The position numbers and the translations under genes are program-made. This document shows, piece after piece, positions 3,813-44,301 of a DNA stretch of 50,232 nucleotides. The DNA comes from Octopus bimaculoides. Its lineage: Eukaryota. Location of the stretch: the NCBI RefSeq assembly GCF_001194135.2, contig NC_068998.1:12543946-12594177 (forward strand), written 5' to 3'. Each line of letters starts with the position of its first letter. Position 1 is the stretch's first letter. The notes beneath the pieces are model-generated. The model had not been told where the DNA came from. It did not search any database and saw only the letters and a program-made list of their open reading frames with translations.

Positions 3813-4039
3813 TTACTCAAGAAACAGGAAGAAAGAGTGAGAGAAAGTTTTCTTTCTACTTCACATATATGCACTTATTTGAACTGTTTAGAGTGAATAA
3901 ATTTTTACCAAATTTTTACCGTCTGAAGTGAGTTGTGCTCGAAGATCAGTGTCTGCGAGTTTTGGAAGACAAAATCTAGTTACCGATCCATTATTTCGAT
4001 TCCAAACAATGATAGTTTAACATGCATATCTTTAGTAAC

Positions 4040-4240
4040 TGTTATTTTTTTTTCTCAAATTTCATTGCTGCTGTGCGTAAATAACTGGAGGTTGTCAAAT
4101 TTCCTGTTGGTGAGGAAGGTTTTAGTTTTGGACAATGCACCTTCTCATCCAAGTGGTCATCACCTTATCAGTATCGATGAGAAATAGGTACATGTTGTCA
4201 TCTTTCAAACGTTATCTCTGTGATCCAAGTACAATCCAAG
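4040..4240 (+). mobile_element. pogo/Tigger DDE_1 transposase remnant
   Basis: Translation KVLVLDNAPSHP...LISIDEK (LDN at 4128-4136) matches the pogo/CENP-B-like LLLDNAPSHP motif. A stop follows, and no TIRs were found. Confidence 0.65.
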
Positions 4241-4582
4241 CTAGTGCTAACGAAGGCACATAGACGAATTTCGGTTGGAGGTAAAACAGGGCGATCTTCA
4301 TAAAGACACGAGAACAAAGAACTCCCTGTGACAATTTTTTGGCGCTGTACTGCTTGAATACAGACGGTATGCACATTTTAAAGCATAAAGGGTGTTAGGT
4401 AGGCACGTCTGCAAGTTTTGAAAGACATAAACTCTTCAAGCTACCGGTGCATTTTTCCCATTCCAAAAATCATAGATCAACATGGATATTTTTAATAAGA
4501 GAAGTCAGGAACTACCGAGATTCCAGGGATACTAAAGTAGCAAAGGCTAGCGCTGAAATTTGCACAGATAAGAAGTAGATTG

Positions 4583-5185
4583 GGATCTTTTTTAAAACGG
4601 GGGCCACATTTTTCATTAATGTTTTACGTAGTGTTTTTGGTACCGAAAGACTTTCAAACTTCGTATACTTATCTATTTTGTGTTATAGAACAGAAAAATA
4701 TTTTTGTATCCGAATTTATTTCATGTAAAAAATTGTCTTATTTCGATAATTTCAACCAATCACTGACAAGTATTCAGTTGTTTACATTTACTCCTTTGGC
4801 TCATTAAACGATGTAAAGCGTATTTAATCTCCATACCTTCGTTTTATTTGCTTTTTTCATTTTAAATTTGCTTTAACCCTAACCCTAACTCTAACCCTAA
4901 CCCTAACCCTAACNNNNNNNNNNGTTAGGGTTAGGGTTAGGGTTAATTGTTTCAGAATCGTTTGTTTATGTAGTCGGCACTTAATGTATATCGGCTGAAT
5001 GGACGTCAGTGATTGGTTGAAATTACAGAAATACGACAACTTTAACATGGAATAATTTATGGATTTCTTTTTTTTTTTAAGAAGACTAAGAGAAAAAGAT
5101 GTTTTATATGACACATTCTACCAGTGTTCCAAGTTTCAAAGTGTTTCGTTAATGAAAAATGTGGCCCCCGTTTTAAAAAAGATCC
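4583..5185. mobile_element. Non-autonomous foldback DNA transposon (MITE), Merlin-like, with telomeric-repeat core
   Basis: Perfect 37-bp TIRs (4583-4619 and 5149-5185), 8-bp direct repeat GTAGATTG at 4575-4582 and 5186-5193, and a second internal inverted block at ~4716-4787 and ~4983-5055. Confidence 0.85.
4874..4946. repeat. Interstitial head-to-head (CCCTAA)n / (TTAGGG)n arrays
   Basis: About 6 CCCTAA units (one variant CTCTAA), a 10-N gap at 4914-4923, then about 4 TTAGGG units. Confidence 0.9.
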
Positions 5186-5394
5186 GTAGATTGCTGTCAG
5201 AAGATGGCAGAGGAACGGTTGATGCAGAAAACCGTTGGGAATTTGGCGATAGGTGCTTTCAAACTTCAGACTTGATCCACTTTCCAACTTGTCAGACTGG
5301 TAACGCCAAAGAAAAAGAGCAGTAACCTCGCCTCCAAAAAGAAGTTCATATATGTGTTAAGGAGGTACGAGCTAACAGGCAATATGATTTACGT

Positions 5395-7180: not shown

Positions 7181-7265
7181 GGCGGATTGTACCGAAAGTA
7201 AGGCAAATTGCACTTGATGGAGCAACTCTTATACAATTCTTCATCGAAGGCAACTAATTGGTTCC

Positions 7266-7990
7266 AAGCAGAAGGAGCGTGCCGTCTTTGAGTTCATGAT
7301 GAAGGGGTGCAGGCTGTTCGACATCCAGAGAATGCTACACGTTGTTTATGGAGATGACGCCATTGACAAGAGCAATGTGCACAGATAAATGCAGAAGGTG
7401 AATAATGAGAAAAGCAGTATTAAGGACAAACCACGCGGCTGGAGAACACTGACACGAATCGCCAGCTAGTGTGAACAGCCGACCCCACAATCTGTCAGCC
7501 TGCTGCTCAACTCATTGACGTCACAGTGATGGTGGAAGATTTTGGGTATCGGGGAGTGTATGCAAAGTGGGTACTTCGGCGGTCGATACTCAATTTGAAA
7601 GCGATAAGTGCGAAAGTCTGCTCTGATCTGCTGGGAGCTTTTGAAAGTAATGAAGATTCATTTATTATCCGATCTGGTGACAGGGGCTATCTTTATGAAC
7701 TTTAAGCCTGAGCAATTCAAGAGCCAACAACTGATGCAGAAAGTCATGGAGGTTTTGATGATGACAAAGGCGTCAATCTCCATGATTTTCTGGATTATGG
7801 CTGTACTGTGAATAGCGAGTGGTATATTGAGCCACTCCAAAAGTTTAGAGAATCTATTAAGAAGTGACCGAACAGTTACCATGAAAATGCTTGACTACAT
7901 TTCTGGCAACAAACCAGACAATCGGCAAATTAGGCCGGTCAGTGTTGTCTCTCATCTGGCAACCTCAGTCTGCCAGCTATTCGATCTAAT
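7266..7990 (+). mobile_element. Degenerate mariner transposase remnant
   Basis: Frame-hopping translation: KERAVFEF...IQRMLHVVYGDDAIDKSNVHR*...IKDKPRG (HTH region), GYRGVYAKWVLR (WVPR-like), LVTG...KPE, MIFW, LQKFRESIKK, KLGRSVL. Many stops and frameshifts. Confidence 0.75.
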
Positions 7991-8169
7991 CAGTGTACAC
8001 CTGAAACTTTTTTCCATTTTCCCTTTTGAAGATGATGTTCCGTGTTTGAATTGTGAAGGTATCGTACATCATGTATATTGATGTTATGTCTCATCTGCTT
8101 TTGGTTAATATTATCTTATAATGTTACACCTAACTGCATAATGTGCATCATAATATCTACTATTCACCG

Positions 8170-8390
8170 AAGGCGACGAACTGGCAGAAACGTTAGTACG
8201 CTGGGCGAAATGCTTAGCGGTATTTCGTCTGCCTTTACGTTCTGAGTTCAAATTCCGCCGAGGTCGACTTTGCCTTTCATCCTTTCGGCTTCGATAAATT
8301 AAGTACCAGCTGTGTACTTGGGTCGATCTAATCGACAGGCCCTCTCCCCCAAATTTTCGGGCCTTGTGCCTAGAGCAGAAAAGGAAAGAA
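8170..8390 (+). mobile_element. tRNA-derived SINE family B, full length
   Basis: AAGGCGACGAACTGGCAGAAACGTTAG head, B-box-like GAGTTCAAATTCC, GAGGTCGACTTTGCCTTTCATCC body. Possible TSD CTATTCAC at 8160-8167 and 8397-8404. Confidence 0.9.
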
Positions 8391-9166
8391 TATGTGCTAT
8401 TCACAGAGTACATCTAAACAACTGTAAAGATATCTCATGTAAAATTATGAAACACGTTATCTTATTATATTCCATACATTTATGATTGTTGTTCAGTACA
8501 CATGTATAAGTAATGTCTATATTACATATTTATAAATACATATATGTGTGTGAGTGTATGTGTACATTTAACCATTTAGCCATATACATTTAGCCATATA
8601 ATAATTAGAAATGTGTATTTATGTGCTGTCACGCCAACAACTGAGTAGGGAATTGGGAGTCTGTAAAATGACAAACAGAAGTGATTGATAGTAAGTACAA
8701 TGAAAGTGAGTGACAAACACACGGGGATTCAGAAAGAATTAGAAAATTAAAATGAGTGCGAGTTAGAGAAAAAAGTTAGCTTTATGTAGCACACTGATCA
8801 GTAACAACGGGGGAGAAAAGAACAACGAAACTGTAACTAAAGTAACAATATCCTCAACATGAATAATGTATCATTTTCTTAAATATAGACTCGTCATTTT
8901 ATATATTGCTTTAGGAATTTCCATTTAAGCGTACAGAGGCAGTAAGCAGTAGAAAACAAATTTAAGTAAAAAGGGTGTAATTTTTAACGGCACATGTTAT
9001 GTGCTTGTATACTGTTGAGATCTATAACTTTCGGGGAGGTTCAGTATCCAGATGATCAATGAGAGGCCCTGTAAAGGATGTACCATGTGATGTCTCCGGA
9101 TGAAGGTCAGTCATGTAGAGCTTTTTCTGTCCGTGTACGTGGAGGTACGCACATCTTATGTAAATA

Positions 9167-9382
9167 TTGATTTGAAATTTTGACACAAGGGTAGCAATTT
9201 CGGGAGAGCGGGTAAGTCGATTTCAACGACCCCTAATACTCAACTGATACTTATTTATCGACCTCAAAAAGATAAAAAGCGAAGTCGACCTCGGCGGAAT
9301 TCGAACTCAGAACATGAAGACGAACAAATTGCCGCGAAGTATTTCACCCGGTGTGCTAACGTTTCTGCAAGCTCGCCGCCTT
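9167..9382 (-). mobile_element. SINE family B
   Basis: Reverse complement aligns along the length of the 8170 copy. Confidence 0.9.
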
Positions 9383-9619
9383 TATGTTAAGTAAATATTA
9401 CCGTGAAATCAATGGCAGTTAGGCCTGTATACTTTCTTTTAATAAATATCATCCGATGGTGTGAGAGTAGCTCTATAGATCATAGTATTTAAGAGGGAGA
9501 ATATACCCCTATTCGGCGCTTAGTGGGATTTCAAGTCATAGATTCGCGTATGGCGTGGAAAAGGAAGCCGTTTACATCAGTACGGACTCCAACCACTCAC
9601 TAACTCTAATTAGAAATAT

Positions 9620-15970: not shown

Positions 15971-16539
15971 AAGTGTAGGCATTGCAACTACAGGTGTCTA
16001 TTAGAATTACTTACAGACACTTGGTTAAGTCGACCACATTCTCTGTACTGAGAAAGAACTAATAACAATACTGTCGTATTGAATATGTTAAGAAAATTGA
16101 AACGCAACACAAAGTCATTCTACTGCTATCTCAGAGTTTCTGAAATATTGATATTTGTAGATGTTATCATTCCAGAAGGAAAAACAAATTAAAATAAGTC
16201 CTTGTGAGATTTGATCTCAGAGATATGGAATTCTCAAATACGACATACAACATAATGCTCTTCTTCCTCTTCGACCCCAACCTACAGAAGGTTTTATCGA
16301 TGACGTCGTTATGACAACAGAAAAAACCCCCAGATAAAACAGTTCCATGAGTAATGAATGTAACCTCTTGCGATATTAAGAAATTCTACAAAACTGTAAA
16401 CGTTCATTATTAAGCATTCGTACTCGCGATTAAAGTGCATCTTACTTTTTCTTTATTGAATCATTATCAATAAAGTCTTTATTTTGCTAGCATCTGGTGC
16501 CTAATTGAGAAATATTATTGGATTGACAAAATGCCGTGC

Positions 16540-16680
16540 AGCATTTATTCTGGCATTGAATTAAAATTCCACTAAAGTCAACTTTGCATTTCATCCTTTC
16601 AAGATCGGTAAAATAAAGTACCAGACAAGTACTGGGTTTATGTAATCGACTAATCGCTCCCTCTCAAAATAGTTGTTCAT
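16540..16680 (+). mobile_element. SINE family B, 3' part
   Basis: AAATTCCACTAAAGTCAACTTTGCATTTCATCC...GTAATCGAC. Confidence 0.7.
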
Positions 16681-20989: not shown

Positions 20990-21080
20990 GTCCATCATCC
21001 TTGCGCTGCTAGAAATAACAGCCAAATATTCCAAAATGAGACCATACTGACTTAAAGAATAAATGTATAAATAGGACAAC
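20990..21080 (+). mobile_element. SINE-like family C, 5' fragment
   Basis: CTAGAAATAACAGCCAAAT versus CTAGATATAGCAGTCAAAT at 41069. Confidence 0.5.
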
Positions 21081-21090
21081 GTCCTTTGTA

Positions 21091-21319
21091 TATTGGCTTC
21101 AAAATTTTGGCACAAGGCCAGCAGTTTTGGAGAAGAGAGTAAGTCGATTACTTCGCCCCCTATCTCCACAGTGCACTCAACTGGTATTTATTTAATCGAC
21201 ATCGAAAGGATGAAAGGCAAAGTCGAGCTCGGTGGCATTTTAACTCAGAACGAGAAGACGGACGATATGCCGTTAAGTATTTCGCCCGGCATGCTAACGT
21301 CTCTGCCAGTTCGCTGCCT
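21091..21319 (-). mobile_element. SINE family B, full length
   Basis: Full-length reverse-complement match to the other B copies. Confidence 0.9.
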
Positions 21320-22034
21320 CAATTGTCCCATGTCTTTTAAGAATTGCATGGTTCGGGTTGTAACGTCTTTGATTATAATTGTTCCCGGTCAGGAATCAAC
21401 TTGGATAAAGATAAGTAGACTCAATCGTTGCCCTAAGACTTCGTGTAATGCCGCGAACAGAATGCGAACCATCACATCGTTCAGCTGGTTGTCCTGGTAT
21501 TCTGTCATCTCAGCATCGATGCTTATCGTTTAAACTTCAAGTAAATGCTAAATATGATAAAATAGATATCCATATTTTAATTATTTCTTCAATAAACTAC
21601 TTATTAGCACGCACAATGTCTAAATGAGAAAGTGCATAGGGGAAATGAAATAAAATATTACGGACATTTGGAATGCGGTATTCAAAAAATAAAATTAGAG
21701 AAAATATATTAATTCAAAAATAAGATAACGTAATGTATTTTTCGTCTGTTTTACTTTTTTTTAAAGATAATTATTTATGATTACAAAGGACTAGTGTTGT
21801 GTGATGTCAAGTAAAACAAATAACAGGTACCATAAACAATCAAAATATTGTTTTTCATTTCCAAGGAAACCAATGAGTATAGAATTGAGGATGATTAATA
21901 GACTTATTATGATGAGAATTTGTAATTTATACCAAAACTTATTTGTATATTTTTTTTAAATATTGCAACTGATAATTAACAGCTCAATCGCTGCTTCACA
22001 GCATTTATGACAGAGTACACACAGAGAGACACGC

Positions 22035-38633: not shown

Positions 38634-39297
38634 ATAGTGATAACAGGTGATGAAAAATGTGTCTTTTCTGACAATGTTCAACGCAGACAAAGATAAATCT
38701 CCACAACCTCTCTCAAAGGCTGAGCTCCATTGAAAGAATGTTATGTTGCGTGTGTGTGGAATCACTGCAGTATTGTTCATTTTGAGTTTTTAAACCGCTA
38801 TCAAACACTTAATGCCGACTCATACTCTCATCAGCTGCAACGTCTGCATGAAAATATTTTAAGAAAATGTCCTGCACTCGTTAATTGTGTGAAAATGCCT
38901 TGCACTCGAAACATTGTGATTCTTTATGATAACATAAGACTACATTCAGTAAGAATCATGCAGGCTAAAATATTGGATTTGGGCTGGTCTGTTCTACCCC
39001 ATCCACCATATTTACAAGACCTTGCATCAATTGATTTCTATCTGTTTCGCTCTCTGCAAAATGATCTAATGGAGAAAAAATTTCCTCAAGAAGATCAGGT
39101 GAAAATGTATGTGGAAAACTTCTTCATGTGGAAGCTAGATGAATTTTACTAGAGAGGAATCAAAAAGCTACATGATAATTTGTAAGAGGTCATTCAAAAC
39201 AATTGCAAATATACTGACAAAATAATTCTTCGTAAAATGTTTTTCATGAGAAGAGGTATTTAACAAAATAGGAAGCTATTTATGACTCAAACCCAAT
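38634..39297 (+). mobile_element. Mariner (DD34D) transposase pseudogene, 3' half, with probable right TIR
   Basis: ITGDEK at 38640-38657, KAELH in a shifted frame, then ORF 38730-39152 with YDN...LGWSVLPHPPYLQDLASIDFYLFRSLQN (34 residues between the second and third Asp). A TIR-like end ...TTATGACTCAAACCCAAT lies at ~39297. Confidence 0.92.
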
Positions 39298-39784: not shown

Positions 39785-40415
39785 GTCAAGTCAGGTCTGA
39801 TGCAGAAGCATACACCGTTGCAGTGCGTTGCTGCATTCATCATTTGTCGGTATATTCCCGGCCTCTGCCGGGTGACATGTCAGGCACAGTCCCAGTCAGT
39901 TAGCATGTCTGCAAGATGCCTCCTCAGCTGCCGAGACCATGTTGCATGTGATCAACTAACACGAGCAGTCAACCCATCCTGATCCTCGGTGAAAAGAACA
40001 CGGTAGGCAGAGTCTAACTCGGAAAATCAAGCAACATGACAAAAACAGCCAGAACCGGCGCTTCTAAATCATATACTTAACAGAGGGTGTATCTCAGTTT
40101 CTGTGTAGGGCCGTTAGTTGGATACGAAATCCGATTAATGGTAACCCAACATCCTGCGAAGTGTCCTGGTAGTGAAGGAGTTCAGACGGTTCCTGAGGGC
40201 CCCAGACTGTGTCCAAGTTTCACAACTATAGAGCAAGACAAGGAGAGCCAAGGATCTAAAGACCCAGACCTTTGTCCCCCTGTACAGATATTGGCAACGC
40301 CAAACACGCTTGACTAATGAGTCCACGACTGCAGCAGCTCATCCTAGTCTTTTTAGGACTTCAGACTCGCAGATAATGCCACTACGAATCTCTGCCGAGA
40401 TAAGTGAAGCGGTCA
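39785..40415 (-). mobile_element. RTE-clade LINE, 5'-truncated 3' fragment
   Basis: FTYLG (40394-40408), EVLKRLG, VWRC..TKVWVF..LLYSCETWT..LRRMLGYH*SDFVSN, C-terminal RQLRRHLADM...AATHC, and a GACCTGACTTGAC tail. Confidence 0.88.
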
Positions 40416-42601: not shown

Positions 42602-42820
42602 GACGGCAAGCTGGCAGAATCGTTAGCAATCTGCGCAAAAATGTTTAGCAGCATTACGTTCGTCTTCATGTTGTGAGTTCAAATCCCACTGGGCTCGACT
42701 TTTCTTTTTATCTTTCCGGGGTCGATAAAATAAGTACCAATTGAGCACTGGGGTCGATGTAATCGACTTAACCCGTCCCCCGCAATTACTGACCTTGTCC
42801 TAAAATTTGAAATCAATATT
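42602..42820 (+). mobile_element. SINE family B, full length
   Basis: Aligns to the other B copies. Confidence 0.9.
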
Positions 42821-42859
42821 TTATCCATATTAATATTTAGTAATTAGCTATATTAGTAA

Positions 42860-44004: not shown

Positions 44005-44084
44005 ATCAAATTTGTACACTGAATAGCCGTTGGCGTCACTCTTTCTTTAATACACAATGTCCGTCAGTATATCTTCGTGGCTTT

Positions 44085-44301
44085 AAGGTGGCGAGCTGGC
44101 AGGAAGGTCAGCATGCCGGTCAAAATGCTCAGCGGCAATTCGTTCGTCTTTACGTTCTGAGTTCGAATTCCACTGAGGTCGACTTTGCCGTACATCCTTT
44201 CGGGGTCGATAAAATAAGTACCAGATGAGCACTGGGATCGATGTAATCGACCAAACCCCTCTCCTTAAAAGCTCTGGCCTTGTGCAAAAATTTGAAACCA
44301 A
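44085..44301 (+). mobile_element. SINE family B with 12-bp TSD
   Basis: TSD TATATCTTCGTG at 44068-44079 and 44302-44313. Confidence 0.92.

What the first reader, a model, noticed from the sequence alone, without database searches (positions are those of the whole stretch)
4575..5193. Merlin-like foldback transposon with head-to-head telomeric repeats at its centre
Seen: perfect 37-bp TIRs beginning GGATC, an exact 8-bp TSD (GTAGATTG), a second diverged internal inverted block of ~70 bp, and inward (CCCTAA)n then (TTAGGG)n arrays meeting at a 10-N gap. The arms differ between the two inverted blocks. Established: Merlin/IS1016 elements have GG-starting TIRs and 8-9 bp TSDs, TTAGGG is the molluscan telomere repeat, and head-to-head arrays normally mark telomere fusions. 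Inference: here the fusion-like signature is part of a mobile element. Such a family would disperse interstitial telomeric sequence, possible telomere-protein binding sites and G4/cruciform-prone DNA through the genome. Perfect TIRs and TSD suggest a recent insertion.
Basis: partly seen in the sequence, partly recalled or inferred. Interest (0 to 1): 0.72.

Follow-up and report, generated by a model that had tools for sequence, protein, structure and literature searches.

The report
Foldback mini-transposon with telomere-repeat centre
This is a real, roughly 600-base non-coding "jumping gene" whose two mirrored arms meet at a pair of opposed telomere-type repeats; it is a neat oddity, but only this one copy could be examined, its centre is unread, and the repeats point the opposite way from a chromosome-fusion scar.

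Summary
A perfect 37-bp terminal inverted repeat (4583-4619 / 5149-5185) is flanked by an exact 8-bp duplication, GTAGATTG. It is the only such structure in the 50-kb window. The arms are diverged inverted copies of each other. They meet at (CCCTAA)6.7, a 10-N gap, then (TTAGGG)3.7.

The inverted repeat and duplication straddle the gap, so both contigs belong to one correctly oriented insertion. The repeat number and the switch point remain unread.

Best reading: a non-autonomous cut-and-paste foldback element (MITE) carrying an inverted pair of telomeric hexamer arrays as cargo.

- The arrays read 5'-(CCCTAA)n(TTAGGG)n-3'. This is the mirror image of a telomere fusion, and also of telomerase healing of the arms.
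- "Merlin" is only compatible (GG terminus, 8-bp duplication). Mutator-type foldback elements also make 8-9-bp duplications. No transposase of either kind lies in the window.
- No second copy was found, in the window or in any searchable collection. "A family that disperses telomeric sequence" is therefore untested.

Interest is moderate to low: a new member of a known kind with an unusual core.

The parts
4575..4582 (.). Left copy of the 8-bp target-site duplication, GTAGATTG
   Evidence: Read directly. Identical to 5186-5193. The bases beyond it differ, so the length is exactly 8.
4583..4619 (+). Left terminal inverted repeat, 37 nt: GGATCTTTTTTAAAACGGGGGCCACATTTTTCATTAA
   Evidence: pair I2, 100% complementary; 2 matches against 0 expected; the only inverted repeat with a flanking duplication in the window.
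4620..4643 (+). 24-nt stretch present only in the left arm, an indel directly after the terminal repeat
   Evidence: Gapped arm-to-arm alignment.
4644..4692 (+). Left proximal homology block, pairing with 5100-5148 at about 69% identity
   Evidence: local score 28 against 15.2 +/- 2.5 for shuffles; 1 of 1000 shuffles reached it.
4713..4789 (+). Left inner homology block, pairing with 4983-5058. Contains the perfect 21-nt core TAATTTCAACCAATCACTGAC at 4747-4767.
   Evidence: (pair I1), 14 and 43: local score 72 against 19.2 +/- 2.7 for shuffles (maximum 32).
4790..4873 (+). Left arm-specific spacer next to the array, with no significant counterpart in the right arm
   Evidence: distal part: 237 of 1000 shuffles did as well.
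4874..4913 (+). (CCCTAA)-type array, 6.7 units, with one CTCTAA variant at 4889-4894
   Evidence: (Tandem Repeats Finder, period 6, 94% matches).
4914..4923 (.). Assembly gap of 10 N at the axis of the palindrome; the sequence here is unread
   Evidence: one of four 10-N gaps, all inside simple repeats. The 22 nt on each side are exact reverse complements (pair I3).
4924..4945 (+). (TTAGGG)-type array, 3.7 units
   Evidence: (100% matches).
4946..4982 (-). Right arm-specific spacer next to the array
   Evidence: no significant similarity to the left spacer.
4983..5058 (-). Right inner homology block. Contains the 21-nt core at 5005-5025 on the minus strand.
5100..5148 (-). Right proximal homology block, directly next to the right terminal repeat
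5149..5185 (-). Right terminal inverted repeat, 37 nt, the perfect complement of the left one
5186..5193 (.). Right copy of the 8-bp target-site duplication, GTAGATTG
   Evidence: Read directly.

Best explanation
The feature is a single insertion of a non-autonomous, cut-and-paste DNA transposon of the foldback/MITE type. It is about 603 bp as assembled, plus whatever the gap hides.

Inferred mechanism. A transposase encoded elsewhere in the genome recognises the 37-bp termini, and probably also the 21-nt inverted core about 165 nt inside each end. It excises the unit and integrates it at a cut staggered by 8 bp. Repair of that cut produced the GTAGATTG duplication.

Structure (shown). The body is an old, diverged palindrome. 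Both arms descend from one sequence, but only the terminal repeat and the inner core have stayed identical. That pattern is what selection for transposase binding would leave (inferred).

The telomeric core. Two opposed telomeric hexamer arrays sit on the palindrome's axis. I read them as cargo. Most likely an ancestral arm carried a short interstitial telomeric run in the C-strand orientation, and that run was mirrored when the arm was duplicated in inverted orientation (inferred).

What it is not. The arrays are not the scar of a telomere fusion, and telomerase did not add them to the arm ends. Both processes give the opposite polarity.

Superfamily: open. Merlin and Mutator-type foldback elements are the two best candidates.
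For: - Perfect 37-nt terminal repeat with an exact 8-bp duplication, unique in the window.
- No coding capacity. The longest ORFs touching it are 75-88 aa, with no Pfam match and no relatives.
- The arms are homologous in inverted orientation well beyond the terminal repeat. The proximal block reached its score in 1 of 1000 shuffles. The inner block scored 72 against 19 +/- 2.7. The blocks start 146 and 142 nt from their own ends.
- As a single strand it forms a long hairpin, z = -14.7. That fold assumes the arrays abut.
- The arrays lie inside the duplication-bounded unit, and each is anchored to unique arm sequence. The left array has a private CTCTAA variant.
- The array order 5'-(CCCTAA)n...(TTAGGG)n-3' can be read directly.
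- Published ranges fit. Merlin has a GG terminus, terminal repeats of 24-462 bp and 8-9-bp duplications (PMC8101967). Most foldback elements are Mutator-type with 8-10-bp duplications (PMC4079207, PMC3169594, PMC5225508).
Against: - Only one copy is visible, so mobility as a family, copy number and constancy of the telomeric core are all unshown.
- No autonomous partner was found.
- The centre is an assembly gap. The arrays could be longer or be separated by other sequence, and the element could be larger than assembled.
- The contigs ran through both arms without breaking. In a short-read assembly this argues against a large family of near-identical copies.
- The origin of the palindrome by duplication of one arm is inferred from the arm homology alone.
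Confidence: 0.8

Rival explanations
1. One reading: the element is specifically a Merlin (IS1016-like) non-autonomous element, mobilised by a DDE_Tnp_IS1595 transposase.
For: It has a terminal 5'-GG, a 37-bp terminal repeat within the 24-462-bp range, and an 8-bp duplication. All three match the published Merlin definition (PMC8101967, read).
Against: These three features do not discriminate. Animal Mutator-like elements also give 8-9-bp duplications and are the usual home of foldback architecture (PMC5225508, PMC4079207). A Pfam scan of 114 non-repetitive stop-free segments of the window found no DDE_Tnp_IS1595 domain. No partner could be retrieved from any collection.
Confidence: 0.35
2. It is a Mutator-superfamily foldback derivative of the Phantom/FB/Muta type, mobilised by a MULE transposase.
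For: The arms are long diverged inverted copies, which is the foldback architecture. The 8-bp duplication lies within the 8-10-bp MULE range, and Muta1 makes 8- or 9-bp duplications in a yeast assay (PMC5225508). [quoted passage not shown]
Against: The arms lack the subterminal tandem repeats typical of FB, Muta and Tm1 terminal repeats. No MULE domain is in the window. Foldback structure has also evolved independently, as in Galileo of the P superfamily (PMC4079207).
Confidence: 0.3
3. It belongs to another superfamily that makes 8-bp duplications: hAT, P, Zisupton or Novosib.
For: An 8-bp duplication is the modal length for hAT and P. This rests on established classification recalled from memory and was not tested here.
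Against: The terminus GGATC does not fit the usual hAT start (YARNG) or the P start (CA...). A 37-bp terminal repeat is long for hAT. No hAT dimerisation domain or THAP-type transposase domain was found in the window.
Confidence: 0.15
4. The telomeric core is a relic of telomere biology acting on the element. Either a telomere-telomere fusion point was later captured, or telomerase added repeats to the inner ends of two broken arms during interrupted gap repair.
For: Opposed telomeric arrays are the classic signature of fusion-type interstitial telomeric sequences (PMC6410037). Deletion derivatives of transposons arise by interrupted repair. Telomerase insertion at breaks is documented (from memory).
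Against: Both processes put the G-rich strand 5'->3' towards the junction, giving 5'-(TTAGGG)n(CCCTAA)n-3'. The element reads 5'-(CCCTAA)n...(TTAGGG)n-3'. The terminal repeat and duplication fix the orientation of both contigs, so a scaffolding flip cannot explain it.
Confidence: 0.05
5. The centre is an assembly artefact. The hexamers at the two contig ends were mis-extended or belong to other loci, and the true element has no telomeric palindrome.
For: The assembly is a gap-rich short-read scaffold with 19 gaps and 11% N. The centre is unread. The last 22 nt of both contigs are exact reverse complements, so reads there cannot be assigned to one side.
Against: Each array is contiguous with unique arm sequence, and the left one carries a private CTCTAA variant. 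The arms are diverged rather than perfect mirror images, so this is not a foldback chimera from library preparation. The terminal repeat and duplication validate the join. A contig breaking exactly at a palindromic simple repeat is the expected behaviour.
Confidence: 0.07

Closest known systems
Merlin non-autonomous elements (eukaryotic relatives of bacterial IS1016/IS1595)
   Same: Terminal 5'-GG, a terminal repeat within the published length range, and an 8-bp target-site duplication (PMC8101967).
   Different: No DDE_Tnp_IS1595 partner was seen. Merlin elements are not known, in what I read, for foldback bodies or telomeric cores. Membership is untested.
Mutator-type foldback elements: Drosophila FB, Tetris, Meloidogyne Tm1, Aedes Muta1 and their MITE-like derivatives
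   Same: A body made of long inverted arms around a non-coding middle, duplications of 8-10 bp, non-autonomous derivatives, and frequent simple or tandem repeats inside (PMC4079207, PMC3169594, PMC5225508).
   Different: Those arms are built from subterminal tandem repeats, which are absent here. Their modal duplication is 9 bp. None of those papers describes a telomeric-hexamer palindrome at the axis.
Fusion-type interstitial telomeric sequence (human 2q13)
   Same: Two opposed arrays of TTAGGG-type hexamers at an internal chromosomal site.
   Different: The polarity is opposite: a fusion gives (TTAGGG)n(CCCTAA)n. The arrays here are tens of bases long and lie inside a transposon bounded by a target-site duplication.
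Transposable elements that carry telomeric repeats: ciliate telomere-bearing elements (TBE1/Tec) and telomere-attached Penelope-like elements (Athena, Coprina). Recalled from memory, not tested here.
   Same: Host-type telomeric repeats are physically part of a mobile element. Penelope-like elements are followed at their 3' end by C-strand repeats, the same arm-to-array polarity as here.
   Different: In those elements the repeats are at the termini and tied to the insertion or priming mechanism. Here they are at the centre of a terminal-inverted-repeat element and have no evident role in transposition.
Short interstitial telomeric sequences inserted at double-strand breaks by telomerase (primate and rodent studies, from memory; the review PMC6410037 lists the proposed origins)
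   Same: A short run of a few to about 25 hexamers far from a chromosome end.
   Different: Those are single, unidirectional runs without flanking transposon structure. Here there is an inverted pair within a mobile unit.

Membership tests
MITE / non-autonomous terminal-inverted-repeat DNA transposon (structural class) | Terminal inverted repeats flanked by a target-site duplication | tested here: met
   37/37 terminal repeat and 8/8 duplication. The only such structure in the window.
MITE / non-autonomous terminal-inverted-repeat DNA transposon (structural class) | Small size (under about 800 bp) and no coding capacity | tested here: met
   603 bp including the 10-N gap (593 read bases). ORFs are at most 88 aa with no Pfam hits and no relatives. 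Caveat: the gap length is only estimated.
MITE / non-autonomous terminal-inverted-repeat DNA transposon (structural class) | Multiple dispersed copies sharing the termini | not testable with these tools
   One copy in 50 kb. The host genome is not in the searchable collections.
Merlin superfamily | Terminal repeats begin 5'-GG and are 24-462 bp long | tested here: met
   GGATC..., 37 bp. Criterion taken from PMC8101967.
Merlin superfamily | Target-site duplication of 8 or 9 bp | tested here: met
   Exactly 8 bp. This comes from a single copy only.
Merlin superfamily | Autonomous relative with the same termini encoding a DDE_Tnp_IS1595 transposase | not testable with these tools
   None in the window: Pfam on 114 stop-free segments found only a mariner Transposase_1 relic. 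The rest of the genome is not available.
Mutator-type foldback elements | Long inverted arms making up most of the element | tested here: met
   Arms are homologous over roughly 210 nt of each side, with indels. Hairpin fold z = -14.7.
Mutator-type foldback elements | Subterminal tandem repeats within the arms | tested here: not met
   No tandem or direct repeat family lies inside the arms apart from the telomeric hexamers.
Mutator-type foldback elements | Target-site duplication of 8-10 bp | tested here: met
   8 bp. Range from PMC5225508 and PMC4079207.
Mutator-type foldback elements | MULE/Phantom transposase in an autonomous relative | not testable with these tools
   No MULE domain in the window. 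The genome is not available.
hAT superfamily | Short terminal repeats starting YARNG, with an 8-bp duplication | tested here: not met
   The duplication length fits, but the terminus is GGATC. The YARNG criterion is from memory.
Fusion-type interstitial telomeric sequence | Arrays ordered 5'-(TTAGGG)n(CCCTAA)n-3', with the G-strands pointing at the junction | tested here: not met
   The order is 5'-(CCCTAA)6.7-N10-(TTAGGG)3.7-3'. The terminal repeat and duplication fix the contig orientation.

The most novel reading that the evidence does not exclude
This copy is one member of an active or recently active foldback MITE family whose axis is always a telomeric-hexamer palindrome. If so, a DNA transposon would be scattering inverted pairs of interstitial telomeric sequence through a genome with TTAGGG telomeres. 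Each pair would be cruciform-prone, carry G-quadruplex motifs on both strands and offer duplex telomere-protein sites. That would give a concrete mechanism for the long-standing but weakly supported idea that mobile elements spread interstitial telomeric sequences (PMC6410037). It would also create dispersed fragile or recombination-prone sites.
Probability: 0.3. Interest if true: 0.6.

Novelty: new member of a known kind. Interest (0 to 1): 0.35.

Why it matters
If other copies share the core, this would be a clear sequence-level example of a cut-and-paste transposon carrying and spreading interstitial telomeric repeats. Reviews list that origin only as a possibility. The palindromic, G-quadruplex-capable centre would also mark each insertion as a likely site of replication trouble, breakage or telomere-protein binding.

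The polarity matters here. A break at the centre would expose C-strand 3' ends, which telomerase cannot extend. These sites would therefore not act as ready-made telomere seeds in the way a fusion-type site could.

As it stands, with one copy, an unread centre and no partner transposase, this is an ordinary transposon insertion with an unusual passenger. Its practical lessons are two. Opposed telomeric arrays in an assembly need their polarity checked before they are called a fusion. And a terminal repeat plus duplication can validate a scaffold join across a gap.

Tried and rejected
1. Other copies in the window. I searched with the terminal repeat at up to 3 mismatches, the 21-nt core and a sensitive blastn of both arms. 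Nothing was found beyond the element itself. One weak hit at 8406-8480 (E = 0.017) proved on reading to be unrelated AT-rich sequence.

2. Other copies elsewhere. Exact-pattern scans with the terminal-repeat core and with the 21-nt core gave 0 hits in each of viral contigs, metagenome contigs and genome contigs. These collections evidently do not hold the host genome.

3. Copies found through spurious ORFs. The 75-aa ORF running through the terminal repeat and left arm shares no 5-residue words with anything among 5.8 billion proteins. The ORF across the right end is not on record.

4. Identifying the host. The best hits to the mariner relic at 38.7 kb are only 52% identical and unnamed. Rfam found nothing.

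5. A paralogous empty site. The joined flanks match nothing else in the window.

6. A nested-insertion model, with an inner element carrying the arrays inside an older MITE. Rejected: the inner homology has no sharp ends and no flanking duplication.

7. An autonomous partner in the window. Only mariner relics were found.

8. Literature precedent. Seven full-text searches found no paper describing a MITE or foldback element with a telomeric palindrome. The library is partial, so this is weak evidence of novelty.

Full report
**What is in the sequence**

- The 37-nt sequence GGATCTTTTTTAAAACGGGGGCCACATTTTTCATTAA at 4583-4619 recurs as a perfect reverse complement at 5149-5185.
- Directly outside these two arms lies the same octamer, GTAGATTG, at 4575-4582 and 5186-5193.
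- The next base outward differs on each side, and the next base inward is not complementary. The parse into a 37-bp terminal repeat plus an 8-bp duplication is therefore unique.
- Allowing up to three mismatches, the 37-mer has only these two matches in the window. None occurred in 100 dinucleotide shuffles.

As a chance control I scanned the whole window for every exact inverted repeat of at least 14 nt, with arms up to 3 kb apart, that also has a flanking direct repeat of at least 2 nt. Of 47 exact inverted repeats found, this element was the only one to pass.

The centre holds TAACCC x6.7 at 4874-4913 with one CTCTAA variant, then ten N, then GTTAGG x3.7 at 4924-4945. These are the only telomeric hexamer runs in the window.

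**The gap, tested first as requested**

The window is a short-read scaffold with 19 gaps, amounting to 11% N.
- Fifteen gaps have varied, estimated lengths of 51-825 N.
- Four are exactly 10 N, at 4914, 12824, 26302 and 26623. All four lie between two runs of simple sequence.
- I infer that ten N is a placeholder for a gap judged very small or unmeasurable.

I cannot read what lies in the gap. Whether the two sides belong together is a different question, and that one is settled. The perfect terminal repeat, the identical duplication and the colinear arm homology described below all straddle the gap. They make sense only if both contigs are parts of one insertion in the orientation shown.

The last 22 nt of the left contig and the first 22 nt of the right contig are exact reverse complements (pair I3). 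An assembler cannot assign reads to one side of such a palindromic simple repeat, and that is a sufficient reason for the break.

Still unknown are the number of hexamers, the exact switch point, and whether any spacer or larger insert sits between the arrays. Reading frame is not an issue, because nothing here codes for protein.

**Anatomy of the arms**

A gapped alignment of the left arm against the reverse complement of the right arm, with shuffling tests, shows that the arms are homologous well beyond the terminal repeat.
- A 24-nt stretch directly after the left terminal repeat (4620-4643) is present in the left arm only.
- Next comes a proximal block, 4644-4692 against 5100-5148. It is about 69% identical, and 1 of 1000 shuffles scored as well.
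- Then comes an inner block, 4713-4789 against 4983-5058. Its local score is 72, against 19.2 +/- 2.7 for shuffles (maximum 32).
- Inside the inner block lies a perfect 21-nt core, TAATTTCAACCAATCACTGAC. It occurs nowhere else in the window.
- The inverted blocks found by the repeat finder start 146 and 142 nt from their own ends.
- The last 37-84 nt next to the arrays show no significant similarity between the arms.

With the arrays abutted, which is an assumption, the single strand folds into one long imperfect hairpin of -124 kcal/mol. Shuffles give -48 +/- 5, so z = -14.7.

'Foldback' is therefore a fair description. The arms are strongly diverged, apart from the termini and the core.

**What it is and how it works**

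The element has no coding capacity. The longest ORFs touching it are 75-88 aa, with no Pfam match and no relatives.

A small non-coding unit with perfect terminal repeats and a target-site duplication is the signature of a non-autonomous cut-and-paste DNA transposon.

The inferred mechanism is as follows. A transposase made elsewhere binds the termini, cuts the element out and inserts it at a cut staggered by 8 bp. Repair of that cut duplicates the octamer.

The contrast between 100% identity in the termini and the 21-nt core and roughly 30% divergence elsewhere in the arms is what selection for transposase binding at both ends would leave. This is inference from a single copy.

Zero changes across the 90 sites of the two terminal repeats and two duplications puts a 95% upper bound of about 3.3% on divergence since insertion. 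'Recent' is reasonable but only loosely bounded.

**The telomeric core and its polarity**

At a chromosome end the G-rich strand runs 5'->3' towards the end. Two fused telomeres therefore read 5'-(TTAGGG)n(CCCTAA)n-3' on either strand, as at human 2q13 (established knowledge; fusion-type sites are reviewed in PMC6410037).

Telomerase extension of the inner 3' ends of two broken arms, followed by joining, would give that same order.

This element reads 5'-(CCCTAA)n...(TTAGGG)n-3', the mirror image. The terminal repeat and duplication fix the orientation of both contigs, so a scaffolding flip cannot explain it.

The fusion-like reading, and a telomerase-healing origin, are thus contradicted by the sequence.

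The simplest remaining origin is that the ancestral arm contained, or abutted, a short interstitial telomeric run in the C-strand orientation. That run was then mirrored when the arm was duplicated in inverted orientation. The arrays would be cargo.

The polarity has one consequence. A break at the axis would expose C-strand 3' ends, which are not telomerase substrates.

**Which superfamily**

Merlin is defined by terminal repeats of 24-462 bp starting 5'-GG, duplications of 8-9 bp, and a DDE_Tnp_IS1595 transposase (PMC8101967). The element meets the three structural criteria.

[quoted passage not shown] - The mosquito Mutator-like element Muta1 makes 8- or 9-bp duplications in a yeast assay (PMC5225508).

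Against a Mutator-type assignment, the arms lack the subterminal tandem repeats typical of those elements. Against hAT and P, the GGATC terminus does not fit their usual starts (a criterion recalled from memory).

I scanned 114 non-repetitive stop-free segments of at least 55 aa, from all six frames of the window, against Pfam. Only a mariner Transposase_1 relic appeared. There was no IS1595-type, MULE or hAT domain.

The superfamily is therefore open. I put Merlin at about 0.35, Mutator-type foldback at about 0.30, and the others lower.

**Is there a family?**

I could not find out.
- The window holds one copy.
- Exact scans with the terminal-repeat core and the 21-nt core found nothing in the viral, metagenome or prokaryote contig collections.
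- ORFs running through the element have no counterparts in the protein collections.
- The mariner relic's best hits are only 52% identical. This suggests the host genome is simply not represented in those collections.

One indirect hint comes from the assembly. The contigs passed through both arms without breaking, which argues against a large family of near-identical copies.

In the other direction, the deep divergence of the arms alongside intact termini implies a lineage that stayed mobile for a long time. Relatives are therefore to be expected.

**Comparison and novelty**

The element works like any MITE or foldback derivative. What is unusual is a palindrome of host-type telomeric hexamers on its axis.

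Seven full-text searches found no description of such an element. The review of interstitial telomeric sequences mentions transposition by mobile elements only as a possible mechanism (PMC6410037).

From memory, telomeric repeats are carried at the termini of ciliate telomere-bearing elements and at the 3' ends of telomere-attached Penelope-like elements. That is a different position with a different role.

With one copy and an unread centre, I file this as a new member of a known kind. Interest is moderate to low, at 0.35.

The most novel reading not excluded is a family that spreads inverted telomeric pairs. I give it about 0.3, and it would deserve about 0.6 if true.

**Limits**

- The host is unidentified.
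- The centre is unread.
- There is a single copy.
- The binding-site role of the core and the origin of the palindrome are inferences.

The decisive steps are a genome-wide search with the terminal repeat, finding the partner transposase, closing the gap with long reads, and testing for an empty site.

Noticed in passing
window 4747-4767 and 5005-5025; 5002-5008: The perfectly conserved 21-nt core of both arms contains AACCAATCA (4754-4762), a match to the CCAAT-box (NF-Y) consensus as I recall it. In the right arm only, a near-CRE sequence, GACGTCA, lies 2 nt away. This could be a host-factor site, a promoter-like module or a transposase site. No test was possible.
   Followed up: no
window 4651-4662, 5256-5267 and 5280-5291: The 12-mer CTTTCAAACTTC from the left arm's proximal block recurs exactly in the right flank, 63 nt beyond the duplication, and again at 83% identity 24 nt further on (family D1). 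It may be chance in AT-rich DNA or a trace of an older related insertion. Unexplained.
   Followed up: no
window 7218-7864 (+) and 38724-39149 (+): Two decayed mariner-type transposase relics. The Pfam Transposase_1 match has E = 4.5e-07 at 38.7 kb and E = 1e-4 at 7.7 kb, with a weak HTH_48 match at 7.2 kb. They are unrelated to the element, which has an 8-bp rather than a TA duplication.
   Followed up: partly
window 8114-8413, 9184-9387, 16490-16663, 21075-21530, 42682-42843, 44067-44264; inverted pairs 8170-8299/9253-9382 and 42893-43077/44085-44269: A dispersed repeat of about 150-300 bp, with at least six copies in both orientations at 77-80% identity. It shows up as recurring pseudo-peptides such as YFIDPERMKGKVDLSGI. 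It is probably a SINE-like family. It has no Pfam or Rfam match.
   Followed up: partly
window 40138-40338 (-): A stop-free segment with ...LLYSCETWT...TLRRMLG..., which I recall as resembling the C-terminal tail of LINE reverse transcriptases. Only weak Pfam hits to domains of unknown function were found.
   Followed up: partly
window 3927-4184 (+): An 86-aa stop-free segment about 400 bp upstream of the element ends in VLVLDNAPSHP. This motif is reminiscent of the second catalytic-aspartate region of pogo/Tc1-type transposases. Pfam gave no hit, so it remains only a resemblance.
   Followed up: partly
whole window: The window has 19 assembly gaps (5639 N, 11%), most of them flanked by microsatellites on one or both sides. 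It also has 35% G+C, extreme microsatellite density, and a CpG observed/expected ratio of 0.92, so there is no CpG depletion. No protein-coding host gene or Rfam RNA was detected.
   Followed up: partly
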